From IMG/VR virus record IMGVR_UViG_3300032562_000004, positions 171,813 to 235,812 of that record: DNA of 64,000 nt, one strand, 5' to 3'. Made by a program: the position numbers and the translations under genes. Shown in pieces: positions 7,364-25,551 of the stretch (its first letter is position 1; each line of letters starts with the position of its first letter). The notes below the pieces were generated by a model, which saw only the letters and a list, made by a program, of their open reading frames with translations, searched no databases and was not told where the DNA came from.

Positions 7364-7902
7364 ACGAAATTGTTGGTAATAATGTAATTTAGGAGTAAAC
7401 GGTTCCAAAAAGAATGCCCGTCTTTACCAAAATGCTTAGAATTTGGGGATACCGTTTCGATATTGGCATTACGAATTTTATCTTCGTAAGTATCTGATAT
7501 AAAGCTATTGTTCCAATCGTGTTGGATGTTAAAAGATTGGCTACTGTTAAAAAATATATGTTTAATATTTTGGTTGGCTAATTCCAAATGAAATTGCCAA
7601 ATTTTTCCTTCATCTTCAGCAGTAGCAGGCCATTGGATAATAACTAAAACATCCTGCTTTTTCTCGTCTAACCATTTTTTTGTTGCGGCTATAATATCAT
7701 CGGTGGTATTATCAACATACGCTTCGCAATGAAAACTATAACGAAGGGCTAGACTTAACATCTTGCCCCAACTGATTGCTATATTATCAGGATGCGGTAG
7801 TTGGCCTAAATGAGCTATTCTTGCGTCATCGCCGGCAACAATATATTGATTTACAGCTTCGGCGGCTGTGGTGTGACTATCACCGTTTACATATAATATC
7901 AT
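7360..7902 (-). CDS. Hypothetical, SGNH/GDSL-like
   Basis: N-terminal LYVNGDS and C-terminal HFGKDGH resemble SGNH blocks I and V. Confidence 0.5.
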   Translation of the reverse strand: MILYVNGDSHTTAAEAVNQYIVAGDDARIAHLGQLPHPDNIAISWGKMLSLALRYSFHCEAYVDNTTDDIIAATKKWLDEKKQDVLVIIQWPATAEDEGKIWQFHLELANQNIKHIFFNSSQSFNIQHDWNNSFISDTYEDKIRNANIETVSPNSKHFGKDGHSFWNRLLLNYIITNNFV

Positions 7903-8372
7903 TGTTGTTTTAAGAGTTTAAAAGTTTCAGCTTCGACTACACGTCTGCGTAAACTACTACTTGAAAACGAATGGTCACGATCGTTAAAAATACATTCGAT
8001 ACCTCGTCGATAACATTCACTCTTTCCAGTAAATTCTTTATCCTCATACTCAATACCCAATACACGAACATCCAAAGGCAGTATTAGAAGCAAATCAACT
8101 AAGTCTTGTTCTGTTTGATAAACAACAACTTCGTCTACATAGCGACAAGCGGCTAATTGTATTTGCCGTTCAACAATACTTTGTACAGGTTTGTTTTTAG
8201 TATCTCGGTCAATAGTAGGATCTGTTTGCAATCCAGCAATTAAGTAATCACAATGGTTCTTAGCTTCGGATAGCATAGCAATATGCCCAGCGTGTAGCAT
8301 ATCAAAAGTACTAAAGGTAATACCAATCTTTTTACCTTCTTCTGTAAGTCTGCGAATGTGATTAAAAATCAA
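7899..8372 (-). CDS. Cytidylyltransferase (TagD/RfaE-like, HxGH family)
   Basis: TFSTFDMLHAGH, GLQTDP, SSSSLR motifs. Confidence 0.88.
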   Translation of the reverse strand: MIFNHIRRLTEEGKKIGITFSTFDMLHAGHIAMLSEAKNHCDYLIAGLQTDPTIDRDTKNKPVQSIVERQIQLAACRYVDEVVVYQTEQDLVDLLLILPLDVRVLGIEYEDKEFTGKSECYRRGIECIFNDRDHSFSSSSLRRRVVEAETFKLLKQQ

Positions 8373-8734
8373 CTTACTTCACTCCTGCCATCGCCAACAT
8401 CGCGACTTTTAACTACTCGCGGCGACATTGCTTCGTATTGTTCTGCTGTTTCTAATACTACATTACGACATACTGCGGTAAACCAACGATCAATAATATC
8501 TGCGTCTGTATCTTTAGGATCCATCATATAGCCATGGCGAACCAAATCGGCAATCATTTTGTCATTCCAATCAAATTCAAATGCGCCTGAATTAATATCG
8601 TTAGGATCTATGTCCATACTTAATACTTCAAAGTATGCTTCGCCTTTTTCAGTAGCAACTTGTTTAGCTGACTTAGCTTGTTGTTGCGCTACAGCCGCAA
8701 TTGGCTTCTTTTTAAAAAAATCAAATATTCCCAT
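8369..8734 (-). CDS. Hypothetical phage protein
   Basis: 121-aa ORF. Confidence 0.7.
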   Translation of the reverse strand: MGIFDFFKKKPIAAVAQQQAKSAKQVATEKGEAYFEVLSMDIDPNDINSGAFEFDWNDKMIADLVRHGYMMDPKDTDADIIDRWFTAVCRNVVLETAEQYEAMSPRVVKSRDVGDGRSEVS

Positions 8735-9837
8735 TACTGATCCTTAAACAAATTTATTTCTTCCCATGGCAAATCTTTTTTGCCAAAGTGACCATAGTTA
8801 GTAGTCTTACTGTATATAGGTCTAAACAGCTTAAAGCGATTAATAATACCTAACGGAGTTAAATCTACATTATTATAAATCCACTCTGTTAACGCACGAC
8901 TATCACCGTCTGACTCTATATAAAAACTCATAGGTTGTGCTACCCCAATAGCATAACTAATTTGTACAGTAGCCCAGTTAGCACGACCAGCGGCAACAAT
9001 ATTCTTAGCCAAATAGCGAGCCATGTAAGCGGCGCTACGGTCTACCTTAGTAGGATCCTTGCCACTAAACGCACCACCGCCGTGTGGGCTATATCCACCG
9101 TATGTGTCTACAATAATCTTACGACCTGTTAATCCTGTGTCACCATCAGGACCACCTACTACAAAACGCCCTGTTGGGTTAATATAAAATTCTGTCTTTT
9201 CATCTACAAATTCTGTAGGTAATATATTACGAATAATATTGCCAACGTCTTTACGAACAGTTTCGATATCAACATCGGCATTATGTTGTGTAGAACAAAC
9301 TACTTTAGCAATACGAATAGGTTTGGCATCATCGCTGTATTCAAAAGTAACTTGACTCTTAGCATCTGGTCCAAGATAGTTAAGTACACCTTGTTTACGA
9401 ACTTGTGTTAACCCTTCTACAATTCTATGACTCCAGTAAATTGCCGAAGGCATAAAGTTTTCTGTTTCGTTACAAGCATATCCAAACATTAATCCTTGGT
9501 CGCCTGCGCCAAAGTTGTCTGTGCCTAACGCAATATCTGCGGACTGGCCATGTAGCAAGTTAATAATTTTAACAGTACGCCAATCAAATCCTGACTGCTC
9601 GTAACCAATATCTTTGATGACTCGACGAATAGCTGATTCTACTTCTTCTGAATGTAATACACCTTTATATTCTCCAGCAACAATTACTGTATCTGTAGTT
9701 ACCAATGTTTCACAAGCACAACGAAGACTAGTGTCTTCTTTACTCATTACTAAATCTAAAATAGCATCACTAATAGCATCTGCTACTTTGTCTGGATGTC
9801 CTTCTGATACTGATTCGCTTGTGAATAGATAGCTCAT
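8734..9837 (-). CDS. metK: S-adenosylmethionine synthetase
   Basis: FTSESVSEGHPDK, GAGDQG, GGGAFSGKDPTKVDRS signatures; start at MSYLFTSES (9837). Confidence 0.98.
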   Translation of the reverse strand: MSYLFTSESVSEGHPDKVADAISDAILDLVMSKEDTSLRCACETLVTTDTVIVAGEYKGVLHSEEVESAIRRVIKDIGYEQSGFDWRTVKIINLLHGQSADIALGTDNFGAGDQGLMFGYACNETENFMPSAIYWSHRIVEGLTQVRKQGVLNYLGPDAKSQVTFEYSDDAKPIRIAKVVCSTQHNADVDIETVRKDVGNIIRNILPTEFVDEKTEFYINPTGRFVVGGPDGDTGLTGRKIIVDTYGGYSPHGGGAFSGKDPTKVDRSAAYMARYLAKNIVAAGRANWATVQISYAIGVAQPMSFYIESDGDSRALTEWIYNNVDLTPLGIINRFKLFRPIYSKTTNYGHFGKKDLPWEEINLFKDQ

Positions 9838-10079
9838 TAATTTCCTTTTAATTTCCATATAAGATGTTCGGTACTGCTATGCCATTTGTATTGATACGCT
9901 GGTTCGCCTGGCCCGGACCATCCAGCTACGCCACGATAGGCATATTCTAGCCAGATTAACTTATTACTTAGCGCACATTTATGGGGTAGCCAAGAAAATT
10001 TGAGTTCCCAAAATGCCTTTCTATAAAAAGGATCGATTAAATCAGGTATAGGCATACCATGAAATCCTTGTGGATACAA
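9837..10079 (-). CDS. Hypothetical protein
   Basis: 80-aa ORF. Confidence 0.55.
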   Translation of the reverse strand: MYPQGFHGMPIPDLIDPFYRKAFWELKFSWLPHKCALSNKLIWLEYAYRGVAGWSGPGEPAYQYKWHSSTEHLIWKLKGN

Positions 10080-10934
10080 TCAAGTACCCCAGTCGTTTTT
10101 CCAAAGAACCACTTGAAGTCTATCACTATAGCGTAAGCCATTTGCCATAGCTAGTTCTGCTACTCGACGATTATTCAAAGTATAAACACTTTCAACCCCG
10201 CCAACTGGCATTAAGTAAATTGGGCCTTTAAACCCAGCCGCTTGATAAATTTGCGATACTGCTAGTGCTTCTTCGGCATCTTCTTCTGTAGAGATTACAA
10301 ATTTTAAATAAGTGTATCCAACTTCTTGATATTCGCAAACTACTTCAGGCTTAATAGCATCTTCACGCAATTCACCAGAGCAACTTAATTTAGCACTAAC
10401 ACTAAATGTAACTTGTTTAGGCTTGCCAACTCCATCTAATGACCAGTTAATCAAAAACTCTTTAAACTCTGGACTTAGCTTTTGAGTGCCATTCGTTTCA
10501 AAAGTAATTTCTCGTAAATTGGCCATCTTAGGATTGTTCAGCAAGTCTGGATAAGCACGTTGCCAACCTAACAAAGGTTCTCCGCCTGTGATAACCAAGT
10601 GCTCAGTGCCCCACTGACCAAATGGCAGAATCTCCATAATGCGATTAGCAATAGCATCTGACTCCATTAAAGGACTTAAATCTTTAAAGCGCGGATCCCA
10701 ACTAGCATAGCTATCACATCCTGTACTTACTAATGGCAAGTCTTCATATTTGGTAAACATATGAGCAACTTCTGCTATTTCTTCTACTTCTGTGCTAAGT
10801 TGACCTTTGGGCATACCAAATCCAGCACAGCGGAAATTACAGCCGAAAGTTCTAAGGAATATACTGGGCACTCCCATATAGCGACCTTCGCCTTGAATAC
10901 TATAAAATAGTTCTGCTACTTTTAATTTACTCAC
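10080..10934 (-). CDS. queE: 7-carboxy-7-deazaguanine synthase (radical SAM)
   Basis: ELFYSIQGEG...FLRTFGCNFRC...CDS, ITGGEP, ETNGT. Confidence 0.92.
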   Translation of the reverse strand: MSKLKVAELFYSIQGEGRYMGVPSIFLRTFGCNFRCAGFGMPKGQLSTEVEEIAEVAHMFTKYEDLPLVSTGCDSYASWDPRFKDLSPLMESDAIANRIMEILPFGQWGTEHLVITGGEPLLGWQRAYPDLLNNPKMANLREITFETNGTQKLSPEFKEFLINWSLDGVGKPKQVTFSVSAKLSCSGELREDAIKPEVVCEYQEVGYTYLKFVISTEEDAEEALAVSQIYQAAGFKGPIYLMPVGGVESVYTLNNRRVAELAMANGLRYSDRLQVVLWKNDWGT

Positions 10935-11220
10935 CGAATTCCTCTCTCATCATTTGATCATGTTCATTTTCTTCTTTAGCACCTTTCCGTGCTTTTTGTT
11001 CTTGATAGCCGCGACTACCGTCTCCTTTGCCTTTTACTCTGCGCCCACACTCCGTACATTCGTGAAATCCTTGTACAAACTCTTTTCCACTATCAAATGT
11101 TATTACTTCTGTGCCTTCGATTGTGAATTTTTTGTAACACTGGTTAAAGGTACAAACCACTTTCATAGTTTCAGGATCTATAAAAGATACGTCTACTTTT
11201 TTCTTTGACAATTTACTCAT
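10927..11220 (-). CDS. Hypothetical, Cys-motif (zinc-ribbon-like) protein
   Basis: CTFNQC...CTEC; start set at MSKLSKK (11220). Confidence 0.55.
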   Translation of the reverse strand: MSKLSKKKVDVSFIDPETMKVVCTFNQCYKKFTIEGTEVITFDSGKEFVQGFHECTECGRRVKGKGDGSRGYQEQKARKGAKEENEHDQMMREEFGE

Positions 11221-11771
11221 TTCTTCCACCACCCTTCATAAGGAAAATTAACCCATCGAGGGTCTTCGTTTTTATTAATCTCCATACCAGCATAGTTAAT
11301 AGTTAATTCACTCTTACTTGGTAAGTTATCGATTAGTACTGCTACTCGTACATTGTTGCCCCAAACTTGTTCCCAAACTTCTGTAGCCTGCGGTAAGCAA
11401 CTTGATTGCCAATCTTGTTTAATCCAGTTTAGAGTAGCACCTGTATCATTAATATCATCAACGATAAGAATATTTTTGCGTAGCTTTTTCTTAGAATATG
11501 ATTCGTGATCTTTGCGGATTTCTAAGTTGACATACCCAAAGGCATCACTTGCCATTCCGCAATCACTTACACAATCTTGATCATCCCGTAATGATACTTT
11601 AAGTGTTTGCATTGGCACGTCTAGATATTGGGATATAAGAACAGCTGGAAGTAACCCGCCACGAGTAAGTCCTACAACATAATCGGGTTTCCAGCCGTCT
11701 TTCGTAATTTGACGTAGAATGTCTTGAGTTAAACATTCTACGTCTTTGTAAGTTAAATTAGTATGGTCCAT
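11217..11771 (-). CDS. Type I phosphoribosyltransferase (Gpt/Hpt-like)
   Basis: VVGLTRGGLLPA, LIVDDINDTGAT PRPP-binding motif, WVNFPYE. Confidence 0.9.
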   Translation of the reverse strand: MDHTNLTYKDVECLTQDILRQITKDGWKPDYVVGLTRGGLLPAVLISQYLDVPMQTLKVSLRDDQDCVSDCGMASDAFGYVNLEIRKDHESYSKKKLRKNILIVDDINDTGATLNWIKQDWQSSCLPQATEVWEQVWGNNVRVAVLIDNLPSKSELTINYAGMEINKNEDPRWVNFPYEGWWKK

Positions 11772-11777
11772 ACAAGT

Positions 11778-11806
11778 ATTATACACACTTGTATTTAGGT
11801 CGTCAA
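11778..11806 (-). promoter_or_regulatory. sigma70 promoter with nested CTAAATA late motif
   Basis: TTGACG-ACCTAAATACAAGTGTG-TATAAT. Confidence 0.75.
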
Positions 11807-11810
11807 GCTA

Positions 11811-12704
11811 TTACGATAAAATTTGGCGAATACCTTCTTCAAACGACATAGGATTATAGTCAGGCATAATCGAACGAAGTTTGGTAATATCAGGACGGCG
11901 ATTAGCAACAGAACCTGGCATACTTGGTAACTGTTCAAATACTGCGTCTGGATGACCTAATTCGGTAGCAATAACTTTAACAGCATCACCAATTGAAATC
12001 TCGCGGTCATTGCCCACATTAACCAATTCACGAGTAGTGTTTTCGGCAACATAGATACTAGCACGGATAGCATCTGATACATGACAGAAGCTACGAGTTT
12101 CTTGTGCGCCGATTACAGAGAAAATACCGTTTTTAATCTTGTTAATTTGGTCACCTAAGAAATGACCTTGTTTACTGTTTTCACCATATACATTAAAGTA
12201 ACGGATCATAACATAAGGTAAGTCCGAATTAGCCAAATAGTTTTCACTAGTAATCTTAGCCAAACGATAACTCCAACGAGCATTGTGTATATCTTTAATA
12301 AACACATCTGAATTCTCTGGAACTGGACTCGTAGGATCATCTGCTACAATTTCACTGCTCGAAGCATATACTAAGCTCTTAAGATTAGTACATTTACGAG
12401 CAAAATTGAAAATGTTTAAATCGCAAACAAAGTTATTTTCTAATACCTTGTTAGGCATTTTGTAAAAGTTAGTTGTACCGTTAATAGCACCATAGTGATA
12501 AATGTAATCAAAATCAGTTGGCAATAATTCATCAAACAATACTGTGTTATTTAAGTCAGCGGCAACAAACTTATCACAATCAGGAATACTTGAACTACGA
12601 CTATGATTATCTAGTGCCCATACTTCATTGCCAGCGGCTTTAAGTTGTTTACAAAATTCTGTGCCTAGCAATCCGCTAGCGCCTGTAATTAAAATTTTAG
12701 CCAT
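11811..12704 (-). CDS. NAD-dependent nucleotide-sugar epimerase/dehydratase (extended SDR)
   Basis: ITGASGLLG, YASSSE, YRLAK (YxxxK), RYFNVYG. Confidence 0.92.
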   Translation of the reverse strand: MAKILITGASGLLGTEFCKQLKAAGNEVWALDNHSRSSSIPDCDKFVAADLNNTVLFDELLPTDFDYIYHYGAINGTTNFYKMPNKVLENNFVCDLNIFNFARKCTNLKSLVYASSSEIVADDPTSPVPENSDVFIKDIHNARWSYRLAKITSENYLANSDLPYVMIRYFNVYGENSKQGHFLGDQINKIKNGIFSVIGAQETRSFCHVSDAIRASIYVAENTTRELVNVGNDREISIGDAVKVIATELGHPDAVFEQLPSMPGSVANRRPDITKLRSIMPDYNPMSFEEGIRQILS

Positions 12705-13473
12705 TTACAATTTTCTCATTATCTTTAATAGTTGCTTCAATCATAGCGAAGTCAAGTCCTAAGTTCTTAACTAAGTTAGCCCACGCACTTGTATCTTTTG
12801 GCAAGCAATGTCCGCCAAAGCCACGCAAGTTTTCATTACACATCAAATATGCTGGATTAATACAATCACGCTTGGTAATAGCATTGTAAACATTATTATA
12901 ATCTGCGCCTAATGCTTTACATACTTCATAAGCAATATTAGCAAAAATAATTTGTACAGAATGATTTACATTGTTGAAGTATTTGATAACTTCTGCTTCT
13001 GCTGGCTTAACACAAGCAACATTTTGTGGCAAGTTACCATGGATAGCTTTAACAATAATATAATCTTCTTCGCGATTACTGCCAATTACTAATAAATCAT
13101 GATTGTACATAAAATCAGCTAACGCTGTTTTAGCACGAAGAAATTCTGGAACGGAGCAAATACGCAAGTTAGGGTATTGGGCAGATAGCTTATCGCAAGT
13201 ACCAGGAACACAAGTACTTTTAAGTCCTACTAAACCTTTGTAGCCAGCGTCGTTTAATTCGCCAACTACCTTTTCTACAATACTTGTATCGCAATCACCA
13301 TTTGGCGCTTGGTTAGTAGGAACACAAATGAATACACATTCTGTATCTAATACATCATTAAGTGTTGATCCTTCGTATGCTGGATCAAAGAAACTCATTT
13401 GGTGACCCAAATGATTTAATCCTTCATAAACTGCTTTGCCTACTGTGCCTTTTCCTATTAAACCAATCTTCAT
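12697..13473 (-). CDS. UDP-glucose/GDP-mannose dehydrogenase family (lacking the C-terminal domain)
   Basis: IGLIGKGTVG, FICVPT, KST, PEFLR, GFGGHCLPKD. Confidence 0.9.
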   Translation of the reverse strand: MKIGLIGKGTVGKAVYEGLNHLGHQMSFFDPAYEGSTLNDVLDTECVFICVPTNQAPNGDCDTSIVEKVVGELNDAGYKGLVGLKSTCVPGTCDKLSAQYPNLRICSVPEFLRAKTALADFMYNHDLLVIGSNREEDYIIVKAIHGNLPQNVACVKPAEAEVIKYFNNVNHSVQIIFANIAYEVCKALGADYNNVYNAITKRDCINPAYLMCNENLRGFGGHCLPKDTSAWANLVKNLGLDFAMIEATIKDNEKIVNG

Positions 13474-14070
13474 TCAATTCTCCTCTGGATATTTCATATC
13501 AACTAGTTGATTACTCTGAGCTGACGCCATGCTTAATATTTCTTGTGCCACATCTTCGGGTTCTAAACATATAGCCGAAGTTTTCATATCTATCATTTTA
13601 GTGCGTGTGCGTACTGGATTAATTAATCCTAATGTAACTTCACTGCCTTTAAAATACTCACAGGCACCTTGCCATACATTATATAGTGCTGCTTTACTGG
13701 CGGCGTATAAAATGTAGTCTTTGCGTCCTGACTTATACGCACTAGATCCAACCATAATAATCTTTACAGGTTTCTTAGTACCGTTACTAATGTAATGACG
13801 AATAATGGACCAATTCGATCCAATGTTTATATCAAATGTATTTGAATGTGTTTCGTTATTAGTTTTATCGAAATGACCTACACAATTTACAATAACATCT
13901 GGATCATTACTTGATAACATTTCTTGTATTTTAATATCGCTATCTAAATAAACAAAATTTACTTGATTTTTGCTAATAGGTTTGACAATATAGCCGGCTC
14001 GAGTGAAGGCTTCACAGGTAGCTTGACCGATGCCGCCATTAGATCCAAATATAACTGCTCGTTTAATCAT
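13474..14070 (-). CDS. Short-chain dehydrogenase/reductase
   Basis: IFGSNGGIG, YAASK. Confidence 0.85.
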   Translation of the reverse strand: MIKRAVIFGSNGGIGQATCEAFTRAGYIVKPISKNQVNFVYLDSDIKIQEMLSSNDPDVIVNCVGHFDKTNNETHSNTFDINIGSNWSIIRHYISNGTKKPVKIIMVGSSAYKSGRKDYILYAASKAALYNVWQGACEYFKGSEVTLGLINPVRTRTKMIDMKTSAICLEPEDVAQEILSMASAQSNQLVDMKYPEEN

Positions 14071-18901: not shown

Positions 18902-18930
18902 ATTATAAAGGTTATTTAGGTTTAAGTCAA
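18902..18930 (-). promoter_or_regulatory. sigma70 promoter with nested CTAAATA late motif
   Basis: TTGACT-TAAACCTAAATAACCTT-TATAAT. Confidence 0.75.
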
Positions 18931-18933
18931 TTA

Positions 18934-19989
18934 CTATGTAATATTTTTTAACAGATTTGTAGCCGAAAAGAAGTTTTCAGAAAGATCCTTGGCTTGTTTT
19001 TCGATATATGGAATTCGAACATCATATGATTCCATATCTTCTATAATAACCTTACATAAGTCTGGACGATAAACATTATACGCTTCATAACTTTCAGTCC
19101 ATATACTAGGATATTTGAAATGATTATAATACATTTCAGTATAACTTAATCGATCCGGAACTAGGGGAATGGCTCCTAGTAATGCGCCTTCGTAACAGCT
19201 AATGCCAAGTGTTTCTTGTAAGTTAGCAGAGAACACAATCTTAGCTTCGCCCAACAATGTGTGATATTCATGTTTAGTAAGTTCTTGTTCTTGACAAACA
19301 ACGAATTCATATTGTGGTAAGTGTGTAGCCAAATCTTTAAAAATGTCTACTTGTTTTTCTGGAGCAATACGATGTGGAAATAAGATTAAGTCACGCTTTT
19401 TTAAATTCTTATAAGGAGCCAGTTCAGCTTCCATATACTCCATGGGCCATCCTGTTTGTGTTACATAAGGATTGGTACCATTATCTTCTACATCAAATAA
19501 GTTTTTAGCAAACATTTTGATATGAAAATCTGTAGCAAAGTAGTTGTGGTCGTATGAAAAGAAATAACTCTTTTCAGCGTGACGCACCCATGGCTTATCT
19601 CCAACTAAGCGTCCAAGAAAGTCTTGAGGATCATAACTGCCAGCATGCCATAAGCCATGTGTGGTTACAGGAATCTGTAACAACTCGCTCATGTATTTTA
19701 AGTTTATGATGCCAGGATGCCAAGCATCAGTAAAAATGAAATGATCACCAGGATTAACTGCTCCGGAGCAAAATAAACGGCCCATCTGCTCAACTTGATT
19801 AGCCTTGTATATATTGGTGCCACCAAAATTAAGAAAAGCACCAGGAGTAGTGGCTTTAGGAATATCCTCAGGGCCAGCGATAATTTGAACATCGTGTCCT
19901 CTCTTTCTAAGAAGGTTAGGTAAGTGAGTTTTCCACTCGCAGGTATAACGAGTGGAAACACTTTCTAGATCGACTAAAAAAACGGTCAA
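18934..19989 (-). CDS. Glycosyltransferase, GT-B (GT4-like)
   Basis: ILFPHRIAPEKQ, QETLGISCYEG (E-x7-E-like), P.RLSY.E. Confidence 0.75.
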   Translation of the reverse strand: MTVFLVDLESVSTRYTCEWKTHLPNLLRKRGHDVQIIAGPEDIPKATTPGAFLNFGGTNIYKANQVEQMGRLFCSGAVNPGDHFIFTDAWHPGIINLKYMSELLQIPVTTHGLWHAGSYDPQDFLGRLVGDKPWVRHAEKSYFFSYDHNYFATDFHIKMFAKNLFDVEDNGTNPYVTQTGWPMEYMEAELAPYKNLKKRDLILFPHRIAPEKQVDIFKDLATHLPQYEFVVCQEQELTKHEYHTLLGEAKIVFSANLQETLGISCYEGALLGAIPLVPDRLSYTEMYYNHFKYPSIWTESYEAYNVYRPDLCKVIIEDMESYDVRIPYIEKQAKDLSENFFSATNLLKNIT

Positions 19990-20207
19990 ATCGGTCTTCC
20001 TAAACGACGTGCGTCTTCAACCCACATATTCTTAGCATTTTTGCCTTGAATAAATTTGTTGTACTGTTGCCAAGCATAGCTCTTAAAGTTATACAAGTCT
20101 CCTTCGTTGAAACGATATCCGTAGTCAACGCAGAAGTCTAGAAACTTACCAAGGTCATCTTGGACTGATAGTGCGCGAGCACTGGGTTTATATTGTTGCT
20201 TACCCAT
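19986..20207 (-). CDS. Hypothetical protein
   Basis: 73-aa ORF. Confidence 0.65.
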   Translation of the reverse strand: MGKQQYKPSARALSVQDDLGKFLDFCVDYGYRFNEGDLYNFKSYAWQQYNKFIQGKNAKNMWVEDARRLGRPI

Positions 20208-20216
20208 TGTGTTTCC

Positions 20217-20672
20217 TTAAAATTTAATACTATTTGTTGGGCGAGAAAGTTCATACTTTATGAGGCAACCGTTCTCACCATCTTCGGCTACTTCAATCCA
20301 TACAGCACGTTCAGGATACCTGGCGGCTATTTGTACATACAAGTCATCGGCTATCATTTCACATGACTTAAAATCGAGTTCTAAAATATCTTTACTGTAC
20401 AAACTTTCTAACCAGCGTTTAAATTGTATGAACTCCAAATCTCTATTCGAATGCCAAACATCAATCCAAACTTTAAACCAGAACACGTGCCTGTGTGGAC
20501 TAGCTAAAAAGCTAACATCATATTCGCCGGCTGTACATAAATTAGGATCTGTGGCTGCCGCTGGATAACGATGGATACCTTCTCTACGGAAAGTACACCA
20601 AATTTTACGCTCGGCATTTTCTTTAATGCGGTTAGCTTTTTCTAATAATGCTTGTTGTCGTTGTTGATCCAT
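20217..20672 (-). CDS. Second QueD-like T-fold protein
   Basis: HRHVF (HxH), HSNRDLEF, SCEMIADDL, VAEDGENG parallel the QueD motifs HGH...TAENxA...V.E. Confidence 0.55.
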   Translation of the reverse strand: MDQQRQQALLEKANRIKENAERKIWCTFRREGIHRYPAAATDPNLCTAGEYDVSFLASPHRHVFWFKVWIDVWHSNRDLEFIQFKRWLESLYSKDILELDFKSCEMIADDLYVQIAARYPERAVWIEVAEDGENGCLIKYELSRPTNSIKF

Positions 20673-20673
20673 T

Positions 20674-21006: not shown

Positions 21007-21568
21007 ATGTAGATTTAGACATAGTTTTAAGTTTATCCATGTTGCTATCGGAAATTCGCCAATCTAAAGATCTTGTTTTGGTTGGATTTGTATTTTCAAA
21101 ATAACCATAAAATCCTCCTTTTTGGGAAGTGTATGCAATTTGAGGATTTTTGATTATTTGATTTCTTGCGTGTTTATAGGCTTGCTCGCATATATCTTGT
21201 ACATGAGGCTGATCAAAATCAATAAGGTCAATATCAACTATAATACTATTTTTGTCTAATGTAGCTCTTAATTGTTTTTTAATTTTTTTATGAATAGGTG
21301 TATCATACCAATTAACAATACTGATAACATCTTCTGGCAACATTGTGCCTACAGTTTGAGCACTGGTAGCATTTTCATGTCGAGTCTTGAACTCCCAGTC
21401 AAATTCTTTACAATCTACACCATTACCACGATTTATGTTAATGCCCATAGATTCAATTTTATTTTCAAAATCTCTGCCAGCATCTCCATGTTTTTCATTA
21501 GTTAGGACTGTGCCTATTAATGATTTTTTAATCATATCTAGAATGAATTTTTCTTGTGCGGTAATCAT
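20972..21568 (-). CDS. Possible PD-(D/E)xK nuclease-fold protein
   Basis: GRDFE...GVDC...WEFKTR pattern. Confidence 0.45.
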   Translation of the reverse strand: MITAQEKFILDMIKKSLIGTVLTNEKHGDAGRDFENKIESMGININRGNGVDCKEFDWEFKTRHENATSAQTVGTMLPEDVISIVNWYDTPIHKKIKKQLRATLDKNSIIVDIDLIDFDQPHVQDICEQAYKHARNQIIKNPQIAYTSQKGGFYGYFENTNPTKTRSLDWRISDSNMDKLKTMSKSTFGSIFDYGNKE

Positions 21569-22083
21569 TTGATTTCTTCATCTTGAGTATACTGATCCCA
21601 GTATGTATATTTGTCTTTGGCCATTAAATCATGTAGCTGGTGCGTCCATACTCCAGGATTACTATGACCCCATGTTGTGTCATCTAATTTAAGTGTAGCG
21701 TTATAATTAAATTGTTTAATGTAAGGCAATTTACAACTAATCATAGGAATAAATCTTGGATATTCAGAATAACCAGATTCGATAACACCTTCTGCGTGTT
21801 TAATATCAAAATCCAATGTAATCCAATACCCAGTTTCTAGCAATGGCATAATAACTTCATCCCAGGGCCGATATTCTGCCTGCGTTACTGCTTTAGGATT
21901 GAAACTTTGACTTGTGCCAAAATAGATATGTTTACAATCAGCTTCGATTGCTTTTTCGAGAATTTCTCTTACTGGCGGGGTACCGACTACAAATAATGTT
22001 TTCATACCATACGCAATAGTATGCTCGACTTCGTAGCCTGTAAAGTAAACTACATCTTGTCTTTGTTCAGTGTTTAATCCCAC
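21565..22083 (-). CDS. Conserved hypothetical phage protein
   Basis: 172-aa ORF (TLFVVG...HIYFG...WITLDFD...PGVWTH) within the modification cluster. Confidence 0.7.
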   Translation of the reverse strand: MGLNTEQRQDVVYFTGYEVEHTIAYGMKTLFVVGTPPVREILEKAIEADCKHIYFGTSQSFNPKAVTQAEYRPWDEVIMPLLETGYWITLDFDIKHAEGVIESGYSEYPRFIPMISCKLPYIKQFNYNATLKLDDTTWGHSNPGVWTHQLHDLMAKDKYTYWDQYTQDEEIK

Positions 22084-22964
22084 TTGATATAACCTCTACT
22101 GTAGCCGCTTGGACGGTCCTTACCATCCGCAAACGCCTGATCCCACTCTATGTTACGATTATAACACTTAGTCCAGAACTTGTCAACATCAAGTTGTCCA
22201 GATTGAATCCAATATACTGCTTTCTTCATATGCCAAATAAATTCTGGATTACGAGGACTAGGGAATACCATTGTACAGGCTTTCCATAATAAATTGGCAA
22301 AGTCTGTAGTTACTTTCTTTTGTGCTCCAAAAATAATTAAGGCTTGGTTAGCTAAAAAGTCTTCATCAAATACAGCAGAGCCAGAACTTAAATCGATAAC
22401 AATTTCGTATTTCTTTTCTGGAATAGTAGGAACCATAATATCGCCCCATAAGTCTTTATTACTACGACCTACTACAGTAATATCATTTTGTACCTTGTCA
22501 ATCTTAAGTGTGTTATACGCTACCCATGCTAAGAATCCGCTACCAAGAATTAGTATGTTACCGTTGCGCTTGTCAATTTCGTGTTGTGCTTGACGAATCA
22601 AATTGATACCACAAGCTACAGGTTCTATAATATATTTAGGATCAGCTTGGGGAATAACTACAAATTCATCTTTACGAACATTGTAGTAATCAGCATAAGC
22701 AGGTTCGCCGCGAGTAGCAACATAATCGCCTACTTGAACATCAACAACATTACCACCTACTTGGGTAACTTGACCAACACCTTCGTGTCCGCTCATTTCA
22801 ATAGGCAATGGACCAAATCCACCTGTCATCATATCAATGTCCGAACGGCATACTCCAGTCATTACAGCCTTGACTTCGATTTCGTTTTCGGTGTTATCTG
22901 GCTTGTCCCACGCTAGCTCACTGAACGAACCTTTGCCGTCAGTAGCTAATAATCTTACTTTCAT
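22074..22964 (-). CDS. Zinc-binding (MDR) alcohol/sugar dehydrogenase-like
   Basis: GVCRSD, GHEGVG.V..VG, EPVACG, ILGSG. Confidence 0.85.
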   Translation of the reverse strand: MKVRLLATDGKGSFSELAWDKPDNTENEIEVKAVMTGVCRSDIDMMTGGFGPLPIEMSGHEGVGQVTQVGGNVVDVQVGDYVATRGEPAYADYYNVRKDEFVVIPQADPKYIIEPVACGINLIRQAQHEIDKRNGNILILGSGFLAWVAYNTLKIDKVQNDITVVGRSNKDLWGDIMVPTIPEKKYEIVIDLSSGSAVFDEDFLANQALIIFGAQKKVTTDFANLLWKACTMVFPSPRNPEFIWHMKKAVYWIQSGQLDVDKFWTKCYNRNIEWDQAFADGKDRPSGYSRGYIKWD

Positions 22965-23872
22965 GCTAACTCGTAAATGTCAATGTTTTCAATAGTCTTG
23001 TGAATCCATACATCTAATTCTAGTTGTAGGTCCCAAAACGCCGGTGTGTCTTTCATTTCTATAGCAGTACTAATCATACGCTTATATGCATCTTCTGGAC
23101 ATAATCCAAGTTCGAAGTAGTAATGGCTACCATCTTCAAATGTCATTAAAATACTACGGTCATCACCAGTTAATGTGCGCCAGTTAGATTCAATAATCCA
23201 ATGGCAGCCATGTGTATCCACATAACTTAATTCCACTTGATCTTCTACATCATAGATACCGTTAACATCTACACGGCCATAATCTGTTTGTGTAAGTTCA
23301 GGTAATGTCCAAAAGCGTTCAGCCGATTCTGTAAGCATATTTGCTTGGTCGTAACTAAATCCAGATAATGATTGGAATAAACTTAACAAATGCGGAAGTA
23401 AATCTCTACTGACTCCACCGTATGCTAAACTCTTAGTAGTAAACCATGTACCCGGATTAGGAACACGGTCATTGTTGTTCCAAGTTAAGTTAATGATTTT
23501 TGCTTTGTGTGCTAGTTGTGTTAGTGTAGCAATATTTTCACGATACTGATTATTCTTAACCATCATGAAGCGTGTATCAGGATAATCGTCTACAAGATTA
23601 TACCACGCTACTGCTGACTCTAGTCCTGGCTTCTCGATAAACACAATACGAGTATGATTTGCTATAGCACGAGCAATATCTTCGTGTGTAAAATTAGGAG
23701 TACAAATATGAGCAGTATCAAAACAAGCATGATCCTTGAATACTTCTTCCAATTCATAATAATCGGCGTCTTTACTTAAATCAGGATCGACTGTAACAAT
23801 CTCATGACCAAGTTCAGTTAATACTTGTTTGTATAACTGCCCAATGCCCATTCCTACAATAAGACTTTTCAT
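22961..23872 (-). CDS. Gfo/Idh/MocA family oxidoreductase
   Basis: LIVGMGIG, ICTPNFTH, FIEKP, GGVSRDLLPH. Confidence 0.85.
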   Translation of the reverse strand: MKSLIVGMGIGQLYKQVLTELGHEIVTVDPDLSKDADYYELEEVFKDHACFDTAHICTPNFTHEDIARAIANHTRIVFIEKPGLESAVAWYNLVDDYPDTRFMMVKNNQYRENIATLTQLAHKAKIINLTWNNNDRVPNPGTWFTTKSLAYGGVSRDLLPHLLSLFQSLSGFSYDQANMLTESAERFWTLPELTQTDYGRVDVNGIYDVEDQVELSYVDTHGCHWIIESNWRTLTGDDRSILMTFEDGSHYYFELGLCPEDAYKRMISTAIEMKDTPAFWDLQLELDVWIHKTIENIDIYELA

Positions 23873-25551
23873 GCTTCACTTTCAAGTGCGTCAAGTTTAG
23901 TTTCATCCAATCCAGAATCATCCATATGGTGTTCTTCTGGTTCCTCTGCTTCAAATAAATTACTAAACATAGTACTAGCATTAACTGTTTTCTTACCAGT
24001 AGCGCCACGAGTACCGATAATGCTTTGCCAAAACTTATCATACAAATCAATAATAGCAATAGCTGTTTCACGATCCGGAGCAGCAAATATTGCTTCTACT
24101 ACATCCTTAAAGTATACAGTATCAAAGCGTTCATCTACAAGCATATTGGGACATTTGCCCGCATCATACTCGCGATTAGCTCGTTGTACTGATTCTAAGT
24201 GTGTCCAAACATTATGTCCCATGAGTAATGCGTAAGAGAATGAATCCCAACTTGTTTTACCTTCTTTGCCTACTTTATTTTTGTCGCCTGGTTTATATAT
24301 GCAAATATCTTTAATCTGTAAGTTATTACTAACAGGACTATCGTCGAAGTGATGAATTAGTTTATCTTGTAATACAGCATCGCTAAATTTGCGTGTATCT
24401 GTGGCATACTTTTTATCGTCAACGATAGCACTCATACGATAACACCACTTCTTACGATCTTCGATATCTATTTGATGGTAGACTTGTCCATTAGCGGTTG
24501 CTAAGAATGGACTAGCACAATCAAAACTAATAGTGAAAGCAGGATTAACATACTTACGAACAGCCCGTTGAATATCAGTCAACAATAATGCCCATTCTAG
24601 TTTACTTGTACCCAAGAAGTGCATCCAATCTTGTTTACCTTCTTGTAGTAATCCATCGAACTTCAGTGCTACTAGTCTACGCAATACTAAGTCAACGTCA
24701 CACATATTCTGGCCACCCATAGCCCAACCATTAAATGCCTTATTGCCGTAAATGTTTGGATCGCAGAAGTCTTTCATCTGAGCATACCAGTCATCGGCCT
24801 GTGCGTGATTTTCACCTTGTAGTACATTTAAGAACTTACAAGCACCTGTGCGGTGTTTGATAAAATATTCGTTATTGTACTTGGTTGCTTCGACGGCCTG
24901 CTGATAAGATTCAATACCGGTAGCGGCACGACCAGCTGGACTACGCTCTACCCACGCTGGAATATCAAGTACCATACCATAGTCCATAATACCGTCCATC
25001 CAAGCTAATACTTGGCTACGCTTTTTCTGTGCCGCATCTAATTTAGCTTGATATTCTTTTACATGGTCAATCTTAGTATATTTGGTGTTGCCGTTCTTAT
25101 CATGTTTAGGTGTACCATCTGGCTTTAACGCAGGAACTTGTTCTATGCCTTTAGCTATAGCCTCAGCCATTTTAGCGGCTACTTCCGGGCCGTTAGGATC
25201 ACGCCATTCACCTTCCCACACACCTTTACCAATTTGGAATCCGCCCGAATCGCCTAGAATGAAAGTGTTAGCACGATCCCTGTTACGAATCATGTCTTCA
25301 TTCCAGTCTTGTTTGTTAAGATCCAAGTTGGCGTGTCCTGCTGAATACAAACTCCACTTATATGTAAACAAACCTTTTTGACTATTAAGCCAATTAAGCA
25401 TTTCCATATCTTGGATATTAGTAGGCATACGGGCTTGGTCAACATATTGACTGCCTCGTTGTTTTCCTATGTAAGTACCGTAGAACCCCGACAATGCTGG
25501 CAAAAAGATAGCATAGTCGGATTGTTTGGCAGTTAAATTATCTTGCGCCAT
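23869..25551 (-). CDS. dpdA: DpdA/TGT-like guanine transglycosylase
   Basis: ILGDSGGFQ, MVLDIP, NVLQG, GWAMGG, HFLG, SFDCASP; located in a folE/queD/queE cluster. Confidence 0.8.
   Translation of the reverse strand: MAQDNLTAKQSDYAIFLPALSGFYGTYIGKQRGSQYVDQARMPTNIQDMEMLNWLNSQKGLFTYKWSLYSAGHANLDLNKQDWNEDMIRNRDRANTFILGDSGGFQIGKGVWEGEWRDPNGPEVAAKMAEAIAKGIEQVPALKPDGTPKHDKNGNTKYTKIDHVKEYQAKLDAAQKKRSQVLAWMDGIMDYGMVLDIPAWVERSPAGRAATGIESYQQAVEATKYNNEYFIKHRTGACKFLNVLQGENHAQADDWYAQMKDFCDPNIYGNKAFNGWAMGGQNMCDVDLVLRRLVALKFDGLLQEGKQDWMHFLGTSKLEWALLLTDIQRAVRKYVNPAFTISFDCASPFLATANGQVYHQIDIEDRKKWCYRMSAIVDDKKYATDTRKFSDAVLQDKLIHHFDDSPVSNNLQIKDICIYKPGDKNKVGKEGKTSWDSFSYALLMGHNVWTHLESVQRANREYDAGKCPNMLVDERFDTVYFKDVVEAIFAAPDRETAIAIIDLYDKFWQSIIGTRGATGKKTVNASTMFSNLFEAEEPEEHHMDDSGLDETKLDALESEA

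What the first reader, a model, noticed from the sequence alone, without database searches (positions are those of the whole stretch)
7899..25551. 7-deazaguanine DNA-modification pathway interleaved with a branched-sugar/glycosyltransferase pathway: candidate new hypermodified base
Seen: one co-oriented block holds folE, queD, queE, a second QueD-like protein and a DpdA/TGT-like enzyme. Mixed among them are metK, a PRTase, a cytidylyltransferase, an NDP-sugar epimerase, an NDP-sugar dehydrogenase, an SDR, a cupin isomerase, an NDP-hexose C-methyltransferase, GT-A and GT-B glycosyltransferases, and a Zn-dehydrogenase plus a Gfo/Idh/MocA oxidoreductase coupled directly to dpdA. No canonical queC, queF or gat-queC is present in the window. 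Known: FolE-QueD-QueE make CDG, and phage DpdA inserts 7-deazaguanines (dPreQ0, dPreQ1, dG+, dADG, dCDG, dDG) into DNA against restriction. C-methyltransferases make branched sugars such as mycarose. Inference: the phage may attach a methyl-branched sugar or polyol to a deazaguanine in DNA. Alternatively, the sugar genes decorate the virion or host surface.
Basis: partly seen in the sequence, partly recalled or inferred. Interest (0 to 1): 0.85.

Follow-up and report, generated by a model that had tools for sequence, protein, structure and literature searches.

The report
Deazaguanine DNA module with linked glycosyltransferase

Summary
The gene list is real: 25 co-oriented minus-strand genes (7360-25551) include FolE, QueD, QueE, MetK, MazG, a purine-type PRTase, sugar enzymes and a 560-aa protein with a tRNA-guanine-transglycosylase fold.

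The missing queC is explained. The "second QueD" carries the exact DpdL signature (LxxxHRHxF) of the published queC-less route to 2'-deoxy-7-deazaguanosine (dDG; Cellulophaga phage phiST).

Comparative genomics splits the cluster in two.
- **Deazaguanine core.** In 42 of 42 informative related contigs it holds DpdA, DpdL, a GT4-like GT-B glycosyltransferase and an orphan-fold 172-aa protein. The GT-B also sits at DpdL in ACP17, PA5oct, Phosso, BUCT-ZZ01 and BUDD. A Gfo/Idh/MocA plus Zn-ADH pair occurs only directly after DpdA.
- **Sugar cassette.** GT2, C-methyltransferase, cupin, SDR, mini-UGDH and epimerase recur in 49 contigs. Thirteen have no deazaguanine gene in the flank, twelve confirmed by profile search.

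So a methyl-branched sugar on deazaguanine is weakly supported. A glycosylated deazaguanine made by the core GT-B is a live, unpublished lead. It is testable by LC-MS on PA5oct or ACP17 DNA.

Verdict: new variant of a known kind; interest 0.63.

The parts
23869..25551 (-). DpdA-like DNA guanine transglycosylase (560 aa), ACP17/PA5oct type
   Evidence: AF2 pLDDT 90.6. The top 12 Foldseek PDB hits are all TGTs, E 2e-6 to 1e-3. D101 (DSGG) and D344 (FDC) are invariant. hhalign to ACP17 DpdA gives 96% probability, E 1e-9. It is 32% identical to PA5oct gp316.
22961..23872 (-). Gfo/Idh/MocA oxidoreductase, overlapping the dpdA stop by 4 nt
   Evidence: PF01408 and PF22725. Rossmann and EKP motifs are visible in the sequence. 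Present in 23/80 DpdA loci, always directly after DpdA and never without it.
22074..22964 (-). Zn-dependent medium-chain dehydrogenase (296 aa)
   Evidence: ADH_N 7.7e-11. GVCRSD and GHEG zinc-ligand motifs are visible. Travels with the Gfo gene.
21565..22083 (-). o172: orphan-fold core partner of DpdA
   Evidence: Present in 42/42 informative loci. Homologue in ACP17 at 99% probability. AF2 pLDDT 90.9 with no PDB fold match; in BFVD only the ACP17 protein matches. At least 8000 protein clusters, all unnamed.
20217..20672 (-). DpdL (QueD paralogue, proposed CDG decarboxylase)
   Evidence: FLASPHRHVF matches the published LxxxHRHxF signature. It aligns with the phiST, ACP17, PA5oct and Phosso DpdL proteins.
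19986..20207 (-). o73, small conserved ORF between DpdL and GT-B
   Evidence: Found in 24/80 DpdA loci, but it persists in loci without deazaguanine genes, so it is not pathway-specific.
18934..19989 (-). GT-B (GT4-like) glycosyltransferase, core member of the DpdA/DpdL module
   Evidence: E259-x7-E267 motif with invariant R207 and K212. Glycos_transf_1 hits in 11/37 members. Atlas neighbours are GT1/GT4 families. Present in 42/42 loci. Within about 1.5 kb of DpdL, directly adjacent in four, in ACP17, PA5oct, Phosso, BUCT-ZZ01 and BUDD.
17696..18496 (-). FolE, GTP cyclohydrolase I
   Evidence: PF01227 1.6e-39. NCBIfam FolE 3e-39.
16854..17357 (-). QueD (CPH4 synthase), CxxxHGY variant
   Evidence: PTPS 3e-13. 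TIGR03367 QueD is the best NCBIfam hit. Aligns with the ACP17 and phiST QueD proteins.
16589..16873 (-). MazG-like pyrophosphohydrolase
   Evidence: PF03819 3.9e-5. Absent from cassette loci that lack deazaguanine genes. phiST also has a MazG next to DpdL.
15702..16529 (-). GT-A (GT2-like) glycosyltransferase, first gene of the sugar cassette
   Evidence: phrog_14945 1e-5. Atlas score 0.99 to viral GT2 clusters. Present in 40/49 cassette loci.
14473..15702 (-). NDP-hexose C-methyltransferase
   Evidence: Methyltransf_14 1.2e-27, Methyltransf_13 Zn domain and a SAM methyltransferase domain.
14063..14476 (-). Cupin (sugar ketoisomerase/epimerase-like)
   Evidence: Cupin_2 and Polysacc_synt_C, both weak. 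Present in 49/49 cassette loci.
13474..14070 (-). Short-chain dehydrogenase (probable ketoreductase)
   Evidence: adh_short 7.6e-14.
12697..13473 (-). Mini NDP-sugar dehydrogenase lacking the C-terminal domain
   Evidence: UDPG_MGDP_dh central and N domains. TIGR03026 9e-40, covering profile positions 73-296 of 413. GGHCLPKD is present.
11811..12704 (-). Extended-SDR NDP-sugar epimerase/4,6-dehydratase
   Evidence: Epimerase 4e-39. GalE, LegB and heptose epimerase models at about 1e-20.
11217..11786 (-). Purine-type phosphoribosyltransferase
   Evidence: PF00156 3e-13; XPRT and HGPRT are the best NCBIfam hits. Sits next to QueE in PA5oct and BUCT-ZZ01, but persists in loci without deazaguanine genes.
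10080..10934 (-). QueE, CDG synthase (radical SAM)
   Evidence: phrog_2076 4e-55. Five QueE NCBIfam models.
8734..9858 (-). MetK, SAM synthetase
   Evidence: Three Pfam domains, E down to 6e-58.
7899..8372 (-). RfaE-II/TagD-like nucleotidyltransferase (CytT)
   Evidence: TIGR02199 1e-21 and TIGR01518 3e-16. Tracks the deazaguanine genes: 21/35 deazaguanine-positive versus 0/6 deazaguanine-negative cassette loci. In 10 other loci it lies just upstream of DpdA.
7360..7902 (-). o180, possible SGNH/GDSL-type esterase (outside the given coordinates)
   Evidence: The 'VNGDSHT' motif is read from the sequence only; Pfam finds nothing. Present in 31/49 cassette loci.

Best explanation
The region is a mosaic of two functional units in an uncultured jumbo phage. 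The window matches IMG/VR contig 3300032562_000004 (235,812 bp) at 99-100% protein identity across the whole cluster, and the phage is distantly related to Pseudomonas phage PA5oct.

**Unit 1: a queC-less 7-deazaguanine DNA-modification module of the DpdL type.**
- FolE, QueD and QueE make 7-carboxy-7-deazaguanine (CDG) from GTP. This follows from established pathway knowledge.
- The QueD paralogue DpdL is predicted to remove the carboxyl group, giving 7-deazaguanine (published proposal, not yet proven).
- A divergent TGT-fold DpdA with both catalytic aspartates exchanges the base for guanine in phage DNA after replication (inferred).
- In this lineage the module also always contains a GT4-like GT-B glycosyltransferase and an orphan 172-aa protein.
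- It often also contains small, swappable sets of sugar-nucleotide enzymes. Here these are the Gfo/Idh/MocA plus Zn-ADH pair fused to dpdA and an RfaE-II/TagD-like nucleotidyltransferase.
- I therefore infer that the end product is probably not plain dDG. It is more likely a further processed, probably glycosylated, 7-deazaguanine. Probability that GT-B takes part in making the final base: about 0.55. Probability that the DNA base carries a sugar: about 0.35-0.4.

**Unit 2: a self-contained deoxysugar cassette.**
- Its genes are a GT2-like transferase, a C-methyltransferase, a cupin, an SDR, a mini-UGDH and an epimerase/dehydratase.
- It is inserted between QueD/MazG and PRTase/QueE.
- Because it also exists without any deazaguanine gene nearby, it most likely makes a C-methyl-branched sugar for a deazaguanine-independent target. 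That target is unknown (virion, cell surface or other). Probability that its sugar ends up on the deazaguanine: about 0.15-0.25.

MetK plausibly supplies SAM. MazG and the purine PRTase plausibly manage the guanine nucleotide pool, for example by salvaging guanine released by DpdA. These roles are inferred.
For: **Enzyme identities:**

**TGT fold and catalytic Asp residues of DpdA:**

**DpdL and literature:**
- DpdL motif and alignment.
- Literature definition, and dDG replacing all G in phiST: PMC10516641.
- PA5oct, whose DpdA, GT-B, DpdL, PRTase and QueE are syntenic with the window, has DNA resistant to G-containing restriction sites and is predicted to carry a modified G (PMC12191111; PMC7824862).

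**Core co-occurrence:**
- 42/42 DpdA loci with at least 4.5 kb downstream carry o172, DpdL and GT-B. Gfo and ADH are in 15/42 and never occur without DpdA.
- GT-B lies within about 1.5 kb of DpdL in five distant isolates. It is directly adjacent in four; in BUDD it is separated only by dpdA.

**Cassette separability:**
- 13/49 C-methyltransferase loci have no deazaguanine gene in the flank.
- Profile-HMM and phmmer checks confirmed this in 12 loci, with positive controls.
- 0/42 DpdA loci from the first scan carry the cassette.

**Swappable sugar sets nested in the core of relatives:**
- Mini-UGDH + Gfo + ADH.
- CytT + epimerase + HIT.
- Sulfotransferase-like + DegT-like + epimerase.
- A TokK-like B12-radical-SAM methyltransferase right after GT-B in L042.

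Against: - No chemistry was measured. DpdL's decarboxylase activity is itself unproven. DpdA plus DpdL from ACP17 or phiST gave no dDG in E. coli.
- 7-deazaguanine has no obvious hydroxyl or amino handle at C7 for a glycosyltransferase.
- phiST (proven dDG) and Rhizobium phage RHph_I1_18 have DpdL but no GT-B, so GT-B is not required for DpdL to work.
- The cassette is nested inside the deazaguanine module in 36/49 loci. Other subclades nest other sugar genes in the same place. So the cassette could still feed the same pathway here.
- The loci compared are related to one another, so the counts are not independent events. Flanks are limited to 10 kb. Phages whose cassette locus lacks deazaguanine genes might carry such genes elsewhere in their genomes.
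Confidence: 0.55

Rival explanations
1. First reader's single-pathway reading. The whole block is one pathway, and the C-methyl-branched sugar made by the cassette is attached to 7-deazaguanine in DNA by GT-A and/or GT-B.
For: - The cassette is physically nested between QueD/MazG and PRTase/QueE in 36/49 loci.
- There is no strong promoter-like site between MazG and GT-A (weak evidence).
- Other subclades nest different sugar-tailoring sets, including another kind of C-methyltransferase (TokK-like), beside GT-B.
- The cassette lies beside a family-B DNA polymerase even in an unrelated lineage.
Against: - Twelve cassette loci have no DpdA, o172, GT-B, DpdL, QueD, FolE, QueE, MazG, Gfo, ADH or CytT within 10 kb on each side, even by profile search. 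They include close relatives with PolB 84-85% identical.
- The cassette brings its own GT2-type transferase.
- 42/42 DpdA loci from the first scan lack the cassette.
Confidence: 0.15
2. Plain dDG, as in phiST. The module simply replaces G by 7-deazaguanine. GT-B, o172, Gfo and ADH are neighbours with unrelated roles, for example glycosylating a protein or a host structure, or acting only as helpers.
For: - FolE, QueD, QueE, DpdL and DpdA are the complete published dDG gene set.
- DpdL occurs without GT-B in phiST and RHph_I1_18.
- 7-deazaguanine lacks an obvious acceptor group.
- GT-B shows no sequence similarity to any solved DNA glucosyltransferase. Its only PDB hit is WlaC at E 0.08.
Against: - GT-B is retained in 42/42 loci and lies within about 1.5 kb of DpdL, directly adjacent in four, in five distantly related isolates with otherwise different gene orders.
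- In ACP17 it lies inside a tight QueD-FolE-o172-DpdA-GT-B-DpdL-QueE run, flanked by replication genes.
- Clear GT-B homologues (at least 80% coverage) were found only in DpdL-carrying phages.
- ACP17 DpdA plus DpdL alone did not yield dDG in E. coli.
Confidence: 0.25
3. Nucleotide-level (pre-replicative) route. The purine PRTase turns the deazaguanine base into a nucleotide, MazG removes dGTP, and the phage polymerase incorporates 7-deaza-dGTP. DpdA plays a minor role or none.
For: - A purine-type PRTase lies beside QueE in the window, PA5oct and cyanophage BUCT-ZZ01.
- MazG tracks the deazaguanine genes and is also present in phiST.
- From my own knowledge: PRTases act on deazapurine bases in toyocamycin and tubercidin biosynthesis. 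7-deaza-dGTP is a good polymerase substrate.
Against: - The PRTase persists in six close-relative loci that lack all deazaguanine genes.
- It is absent from ACP17's tight operon.
- DpdA keeps both catalytic aspartates and is universally retained.
- Published work places insertion after replication.
Confidence: 0.08
4. The TGT-like enzyme modifies tRNA (queuosine or archaeosine-type) rather than DNA.
For: The fold is that of tRNA-guanine transglycosylases. The window encodes a tRNA-Met and a tmRNA.
Against: - The gene lies in the replication module next to PolB.
- Its relatives are the ACP17 and PA5oct DpdA proteins.
- PA5oct DNA resists G-containing restriction sites.
- No QueC, QueF, QueA or QueG was found to finish a tRNA-type base.
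Confidence: 0.03

Closest known systems
dDG system of Cellulophaga phage phiST (DpdA3, DpdL, FolE, QueD, QueE, MazG; Hutinet 2023, PMC10516641)
   Same: Same biosynthetic logic: FolE, QueD, QueE and no QueC. It has a QueD paralogue with LxxxHRHxF, a TGT-superfamily DpdA, and a MazG nearby, all next to the polymerase.
   Different: phiST's DpdA3 is 259 aa and only weakly alignable (78% probability). phiST lacks GT-B, o172, Gfo/ADH, the PRTase and any sugar gene.
Deazaguanine modules of Acidovorax phage ACP17 and Pseudomonas phage PA5oct (chemistry unresolved)
   Same: - DpdA of the same branch: ACP17 at 96% probability, PA5oct at 32% identity.
- GT-B: 37-44% identical.
- DpdL: 52% identical.
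- QueE is shared. o172 is shared with ACP17. The PRTase is shared with PA5oct.
- All lie next to PolB.

   Different: They have no C-methyl sugar cassette, no Gfo/ADH pair and no nucleotidyltransferase in the module. PA5oct has no detectable o172.
T4-type glucosylation of hydroxymethylcytosine by alpha- and beta-glucosyltransferases (own knowledge)
   Same: It would work alike if GT-B decorates the modified base in DNA: a GT-B-fold enzyme using an NDP-sugar on a non-canonical base to block restriction.
   Different: No sequence similarity to solved DNA glucosyltransferases. The base here would be a purine analogue without a hydroxymethyl acceptor. No hydroxymethylase was found.
Glycosylation of 7-deazaguanines elsewhere: mannosyl- and galactosyl-queuosine in eukaryotic tRNA (QTMAN/QTGAL), and N-glycosylated deazaguanine natural products such as huimycin and dapiramicin (own knowledge)
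   Same: These are precedents for sugars on 7-deazaguanine derivatives. The predicted model of a close homologue of GT-B has a QTMAN-family cluster among its structural neighbours (TM 0.74).
   Different: That TM score is no better than for generic GT4 enzymes (0.73-0.80). No member hits the QTMAN_N Pfam domain. Those acceptors have a diol or use the exocyclic amine. None of them is in DNA.
NDP-hexose C-methyl deoxysugar pathways (TylC3-type C-methyltransferases with dehydratase, isomerase, ketoreductase and transferase)
   Same: The cassette has the same enzyme classes: an extended-SDR dehydratase/epimerase, a cupin, a Methyltransf_14 C-methyltransferase with its Zn domain, an SDR and a glycosyltransferase.
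   Different: It is phage-borne, sits next to replication genes, and includes a dehydrogenase lacking its nucleotide-binding C-terminal domain. Its sugar and acceptor are unknown.

Membership tests
Phage 7-deazaguanine DNA modification, DpdL (dDG) type | TGT-superfamily DpdA with catalytic aspartates | tested here: met
   Top 12 Foldseek hits are TGTs. D101 and D344 are invariant.
Phage 7-deazaguanine DNA modification, DpdL (dDG) type | FolE, QueD and QueE present (CDG synthesis) | tested here: met
Phage 7-deazaguanine DNA modification, DpdL (dDG) type | QueD paralogue with LxxxHRHxF in place of CxxxHGH | tested here: met
   FLASPHRHVF; aligns with phiST and ACP17 DpdL.
Phage 7-deazaguanine DNA modification, DpdL (dDG) type | No QueC, Gat-QueC or QueF | tested here: met
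   None among 62 window ORFs scanned with Pfam. The remaining ~170 kb of the genome was not examined.
Phage 7-deazaguanine DNA modification, DpdL (dDG) type | dDG actually present in virion DNA | not testable with these tools
   Needs LC-MS/MS. The only indirect evidence is the restriction resistance of PA5oct DNA.
DpdA3 subfamily (phiST, Campylobacter phages) | Clear homology to phiST CGPG_00065 | tested here: inconclusive
   hhalign 78% probability, E 2e-5, over 85 columns. The window protein is 560 aa against 259 aa.
GT4-type (GT-B fold) glycosyltransferases | C-terminal nucleotide-sugar domain with EX7E and Arg/Lys phosphate ligands | tested here: met
   E259-x7-E267; R207, K212 and E267 are invariant. 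Glycos_transf_1 hits are weak, in 11/37 members. Atlas neighbours are GT1/GT4. No structure was predicted for this protein.
Phage DNA glucosyltransferases (T4 AGT/BGT) | Sequence or profile similarity to solved DNA glucosyltransferases | tested here: not met
   The profile search of PDB returns only WlaC at E 0.08.
tRNA-queuosine mannosyltransferase (QTMAN) family | QTMAN_N (PF12038) acceptor domain | tested here: not met
   No member of A3 hits PF12038 at E <= 0.1. There is only a generic structural resemblance.
NDP-hexose C-methyltransferase deoxysugar pathway | Methyltransf_14 C-terminal domain, Zn-binding N domain and SAM methyltransferase core, with dehydratase, isomerase and reductase neighbours | tested here: met
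   The gene order is conserved in 49 loci.
Deazapurine nucleoside pathways (toyocamycin/tubercidin type) | PRTase functionally tied to the deazapurine genes | tested here: inconclusive
   The PRTase sits beside QueE in three distant phages. It persists in 6 loci without any deazaguanine gene.

The most novel reading that the evidence does not exclude
The GT4-like GT-B works with DpdL, and in this clade also with the orphan o172. Together they make a sugar-bearing 7-deazaguanine that DpdA places in DNA, or that is glycosylated once in DNA. This would be the first glycosylated purine analogue in any genome.

The small gene sets nested in the module would diversify the sugar between phage lineages in an arms race with modification-dependent nucleases. 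These sets are Gfo/ADH/mini-UGDH; CytT/HIT/epimerase; DegT/epimerase/radical-SAM methyltransferase; and, here, possibly the C-methyl cassette.

The system would be very widespread: at least 8000 o172 protein clusters in metagenomes, plus PA5oct, ACP17, Phosso, BUDD and BUCT-ZZ01.
Probability: 0.3. Interest if true: 0.9.

Novelty: new variant of a known kind. Interest (0 to 1): 0.63.

Why it matters
7-deazaguanine DNA modifications are a known phage shield against restriction and CRISPR, and eight derivatives are described. None carries a sugar.

Three things were not reported in any paper found in the searchable literature:
- A glycosyltransferase and an orphan-fold protein are fixed members of the queC-less DpdA/DpdL module in cultivable phages (PA5oct, a therapy candidate, and ACP17) and in a very abundant environmental jumbo-phage clade.
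- Heterologous DpdA plus DpdL failed to make dDG, which fits missing components.
- PA5oct's G modification is still chemically unidentified.

The result turns a vague 'new base?' idea into a direct experiment on available phages. It also removes a misleading clue, since the missing queC is already explained.

If a glycosyl-deazaguanine exists, it would matter for phage-defence biology (END nucleases and glycosylases that sense modified G). It would also matter for sequencing and base-calling of environmental phage DNA, and as a new enzyme toolbox for DNA labelling.

Tried and rejected
- Megablast of the 20-kb block against GenBank phages gave no match.
- Sequence searches of DpdA against Pfam, PHROGs, NCBIfam and PDB, both single-sequence and profile, found nothing. 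Only the fold comparison worked.
- o172 gave no Pfam, PHROG, NCBIfam or PDB-profile hit. Foldseek against PDB gave nothing better than E 0.03. Language-model neighbours scored only 0.71, too weak to use.
- I tested whether o172 equals the unknown neighbours in other phages. These were phiST CGPG_00066, the Phosso 'glycosylase', PA5oct gp320, and the BUCT-ZZ01 and BUDD neighbours. All were negative.
- I looked for a link between GT-B and QTMAN or the T4 glucosyltransferases. Sequence gives no support.
- Isoelectric points as a proxy for DNA binding were uninformative. The whole proteome is acidic, including PolB.
- The promoter and terminator scan found no more sites than shuffled sequence, so operon boundaries cannot be drawn from it.
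- The supplementary tables of Hutinet 2023, needed to learn which DpdA subfamily ACP17 was assigned to, are not held.
- I checked the pairs of adjacent same-frame ORFs (SDR/UGDH, FolE/o86, QueE/o80) as possible stop-codon read-throughs. I rejected this because each upstream profile match is complete and the downstream ORFs have their own N-termini.
- The idea that the PRTase is specific to the deazaguanine pathway is weakened by its persistence in loci without those genes.

Full report
**What is in the sequence.** Window positions 7360-30482 are one run of co-oriented minus-strand genes, many with 1-10 nt overlaps.
- Deazaguanine and nucleotide genes: FolE, QueD (PTPS family), QueE, MetK, MazG and a type-I PRTase closest to xanthine/hypoxanthine PRTases.
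- Sugar genes: an RfaE-II/TagD-like nucleotidyltransferase, an extended-SDR epimerase/dehydratase, an NDP-sugar dehydrogenase, an SDR, a cupin and a C-methyltransferase with the Methyltransf_14 and Zn domains.
- Redox genes next to dpdA: a Zn-ADH and a Gfo/Idh/MocA oxidoreductase.

The block abuts a family-B DNA polymerase at 27822-30482. No QueC or QueF family was found in 62 ORFs scanned across the window.

**The transglycosylase.** The 560-aa protein (23869-25551) is invisible to Pfam, PHROGs, NCBIfam and PDB sequence searches.
- An exhaustive HMMER search found 970 representative relatives.
- An AlphaFold model built on 43 of them is confident (pLDDT 90.6).
- Its twelve best PDB matches are all tRNA-guanine transglycosylases (E 2e-6 to 1e-3).
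- D101 in the DSGG motif and D344 in the FDC motif are invariant. From my own knowledge of Z. mobilis TGT, these correspond to the general acid/base (D102) and the nucleophile (D280).
- The profile aligns with the DpdA of Acidovorax phage ACP17 (96% probability) and weakly with phiST DpdA3 (78%).
- The protein is 32% identical to PA5oct gp316.

**Why queC is missing.** Hutinet et al. 2023 (PMC10516641) described a queC-less route.
- A QueD paralogue, DpdL, has LxxxHRHxF in place of CxxxHGH. It is proposed to decarboxylate CDG to 7-deazaguanine.
- It occurs in phages that have DpdA, FolE, QueD and QueE but not QueC.
- phiST DNA has all G replaced by dDG.
- The window's 'second QueD' (20217-20672) reads FLASPHRHVF. 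It aligns with the DpdL proteins of phiST, ACP17, PA5oct and Phosso.

So the absence of queC is expected for a known pathway and is not evidence of new chemistry. DpdL's activity is still unproven. DpdA plus DpdL from phiST or ACP17 gave no dDG in E. coli.

**Relatives.** PA5oct is syntenic: PolB, a 240-aa protein, DpdA, GT-B, DpdL, PRTase, QueE. Its DNA resists restriction enzymes whose sites contain G, and a modified G is predicted but not chemically identified (PMC12191111). The system was also noted in PMC7824862.

A scan of IMG/VR with the DpdA profile returned 80 loci at 58-88% identity. Of the 42 loci with at least 4.5 kb downstream of dpdA:
- 42 carry the 172-aa ORF (o172), 42 carry DpdL and 42 carry the 351-aa GT-B.
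- 36 carry FolE and 28 carry the PRTase.
- 15 carry the Gfo plus ADH pair.
- None carries the C-methyltransferase or GT-A.

Gfo and ADH are found only directly after dpdA and never without it.

**The core glycosyltransferase and o172.** The case for GT-B as a glycosyltransferase:
- It has an EX7E motif (E259-E267) and invariant R207 and K212.
- It has weak Glycos_transf_1 hits in 11 of 37 members.
- Its language-model and structure neighbours are GT1/GT4 families.
- Some GenBank records call it a family-4 glycosyltransferase.

GT-B lies within about 1.5 kb of DpdL in five distantly related isolates. It is directly adjacent in ACP17, PA5oct, Phosso and the cyanophage BUCT-ZZ01. In Xanthomonas phage BUDD only dpdA separates them. 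In ACP17 it lies inside a tight QueD-FolE-o172-DpdA-GT-B-DpdL-QueE run between recombination and primase genes. Clear homologues were found only in DpdL-carrying phages. However, phiST and RHph_I1_18 have DpdL without GT-B.

o172 models confidently (pLDDT 90.9) but matches no solved fold. Among viral models it matches only the ACP17 protein. It has at least 8000 unnamed relatives and a set of invariant acidic and His/Lys residues.

No paper I found mentions either protein in this context. DpdL itself appears in a single paper in the library.

**The sugar cassette is separable.** A second IMG/VR scan with the C-methyltransferase gave 49 loci at 61-100% identity. Six contigs match the window at 99-100% protein identity across the cluster, including a 235,812-bp one. 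The run GT-A, C-MT, cupin, SDR, mini-UGDH, epimerase is conserved.
- In 36 loci it lies between QueD/MazG and PRTase/QueE.
- In 13 loci no deazaguanine gene is in the flank.
- Profile-HMM and phmmer searches of 12 such loci found no DpdA, o172, GT-B, DpdL, QueD, FolE, QueE, MazG, Gfo, ADH or CytT, while control loci scored strongly.
- Five of them (L106-L112) are close relatives with PolB 84-85% identical. They keep PolB, o302, o240, o73, the cassette, the PRTase, o121 and o180 in the same order.
- Six others (L116/L138 type) carry the cassette with a different GT2 and two DUF7796 proteins, next to an unrelated PolB.

The cassette therefore has a function that does not need deazaguanine.

**Evidence that still links sugars to the module.** In relatives, different small sets of sugar-nucleotide enzymes are nested inside the conserved core:
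- mini-UGDH + Gfo + ADH;
- CytT + epimerase + HIT;
- a sulfotransferase-like protein + a short DegT-like protein + epimerase;
- radical-SAM proteins;
- in L042, a TokK-like B12-radical-SAM methyltransferase (E 1.6e-70) immediately after GT-B.

In the loci laid out gene by gene I recognised no glycosyltransferase other than GT-B, though many small ORFs there are unannotated; so these enzymes most plausibly feed GT-B. The window's nucleotidyltransferase also tracks the deazaguanine genes rather than the cassette. It is in 21/35 deazaguanine-positive and 0/6 deazaguanine-negative cassette loci. In ten other loci it sits 1-2.5 kb upstream of dpdA.

**Other genes.**
- The PRTase sits beside QueE in three distant phages but persists without deazaguanine genes. 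I read it as guanine-pool salvage rather than a committed pathway step. This is an inference.
- MazG tracks the deazaguanine genes, as in phiST.
- MetK can supply SAM to QueE and the C-methyltransferase. This is also an inference.

**Synthesis.**
- Shown: the gene identities, the TGT fold, the DpdL signature, the fixed DpdA/o172/DpdL/GT-B core, and the two-way separability of the C-methyl cassette.
- Inferred: DNA rather than tRNA is the target, GT-B acts in the pathway, and the base may carry a sugar.

The acceptor is unknown. Options are C-glycosylation at the electron-rich C7/C8 of 7-deazaguanine, N-glycosylation as in huimycin-type natural products (own knowledge), or action on CDG or another DpdL product.

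Rival readings:
- Plain dDG with an unrelated GT-B: 0.25.
- A nucleotide-level route: 0.08.
- tRNA modification: 0.03.

**Limits.** The loci are related to one another, so the counts are not independent events. Each scan returned at most 80 loci, and flanks are 10 kb. Only two structures could be predicted, and GT-B was not one of them. Nothing here measures chemistry.

**Verdict.** This is a known kind of system, queC-less DpdL-type deazaguanine DNA modification, in a variant with conserved and unexplained extra enzymes. It is worth a direct LC-MS test on PA5oct or ACP17.

Noticed in passing
window 1024-1330 (-) and 1788-1860 (-): A phage-encoded permuted (two-piece) tmRNA of the betaproteobacterial type (Rfam RF01850 117.6 bits, RF04321 118.4 bits; also found by ARAGORN) and a tRNA-Met. 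This hints at a betaproteobacterial host.
   Followed up: partly
window 12697-13473 (-): The NDP-sugar dehydrogenase is a 258-aa 'mini' form. It keeps the catalytic GGHCLPKD motif but lacks the C-terminal UDP-binding domain. A 31%-identical version sits between PolB and the 240-aa gene in 23 related loci. Its substrate may not be a free UDP-sugar.
   Followed up: partly
window 21565-22083 (-); L009:10209-10721: o172 is a confidently modelled protein with no known fold match and at least 8000 unnamed relatives. The ACP17 homologue is annotated as 132 aa, but the open frame is 170 aa and aligns from residue 27 of the window protein, so the GenBank start is probably too late.
   Followed up: yes
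L106, L107, L108, L111, L112 (e.g. L108:4700-17400): Close relatives lack the whole deazaguanine module in both of its segments at once but keep the sugar cassette. In its place they carry a Bax1-I-like membrane protein, a radical-SAM/SPASM protein and a DUF6071-like protein.
   Followed up: partly
L042:9468-11276 and neighbours: In one relative, a cobalamin-dependent radical-SAM methyltransferase (TokK-like, E 1.6e-70) follows GT-B directly. Next come a half-length DegT-like protein and an epimerase, then FolE. This is a different way to C-methylate in the same spot.
   Followed up: partly
window 2550-3152, 3771-4391, 5598-6338 (+), 49786-50385, 37032-37613 (+): Several NUMOD3-containing homing-endonuclease-like ORFs and one HNH endonuclease. 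The window's PolB is intact, whereas the PA5oct PolB is split by a homing-endonuclease gene.
   Followed up: no
window 25551-26132 (-), 44740-45558 (-), 3400-3822 (-): A DUF2061 membrane domain fused to an NMN-adenylyltransferase-like domain lies directly upstream of dpdA. There is also a second cytidylyltransferase-like protein and a second MazG/PRA-PH-like pyrophosphohydrolase. These may be NAD or nucleotide-pool genes.
   Followed up: no
window 26132-26854 (-): This 240-aa protein is present next to PolB in 79/80 relatives. It is called a virion 'structural protein' by mass spectrometry in PA5oct but a 'sliding clamp' in the Phosso record. Its PHROG family has no known function.
   Followed up: no
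window 48995-49807 (-), 55779-56552 (+), 36486-36926 (-), 53166-53777 (-), 63095-63973 (-): Auxiliary genes typical of jumbo phages: DnaJ, PhoH, a ferritin-like protein, a weak chitinase-class-I/lysozyme-like hit and a subtilase-like protease.
   Followed up: no
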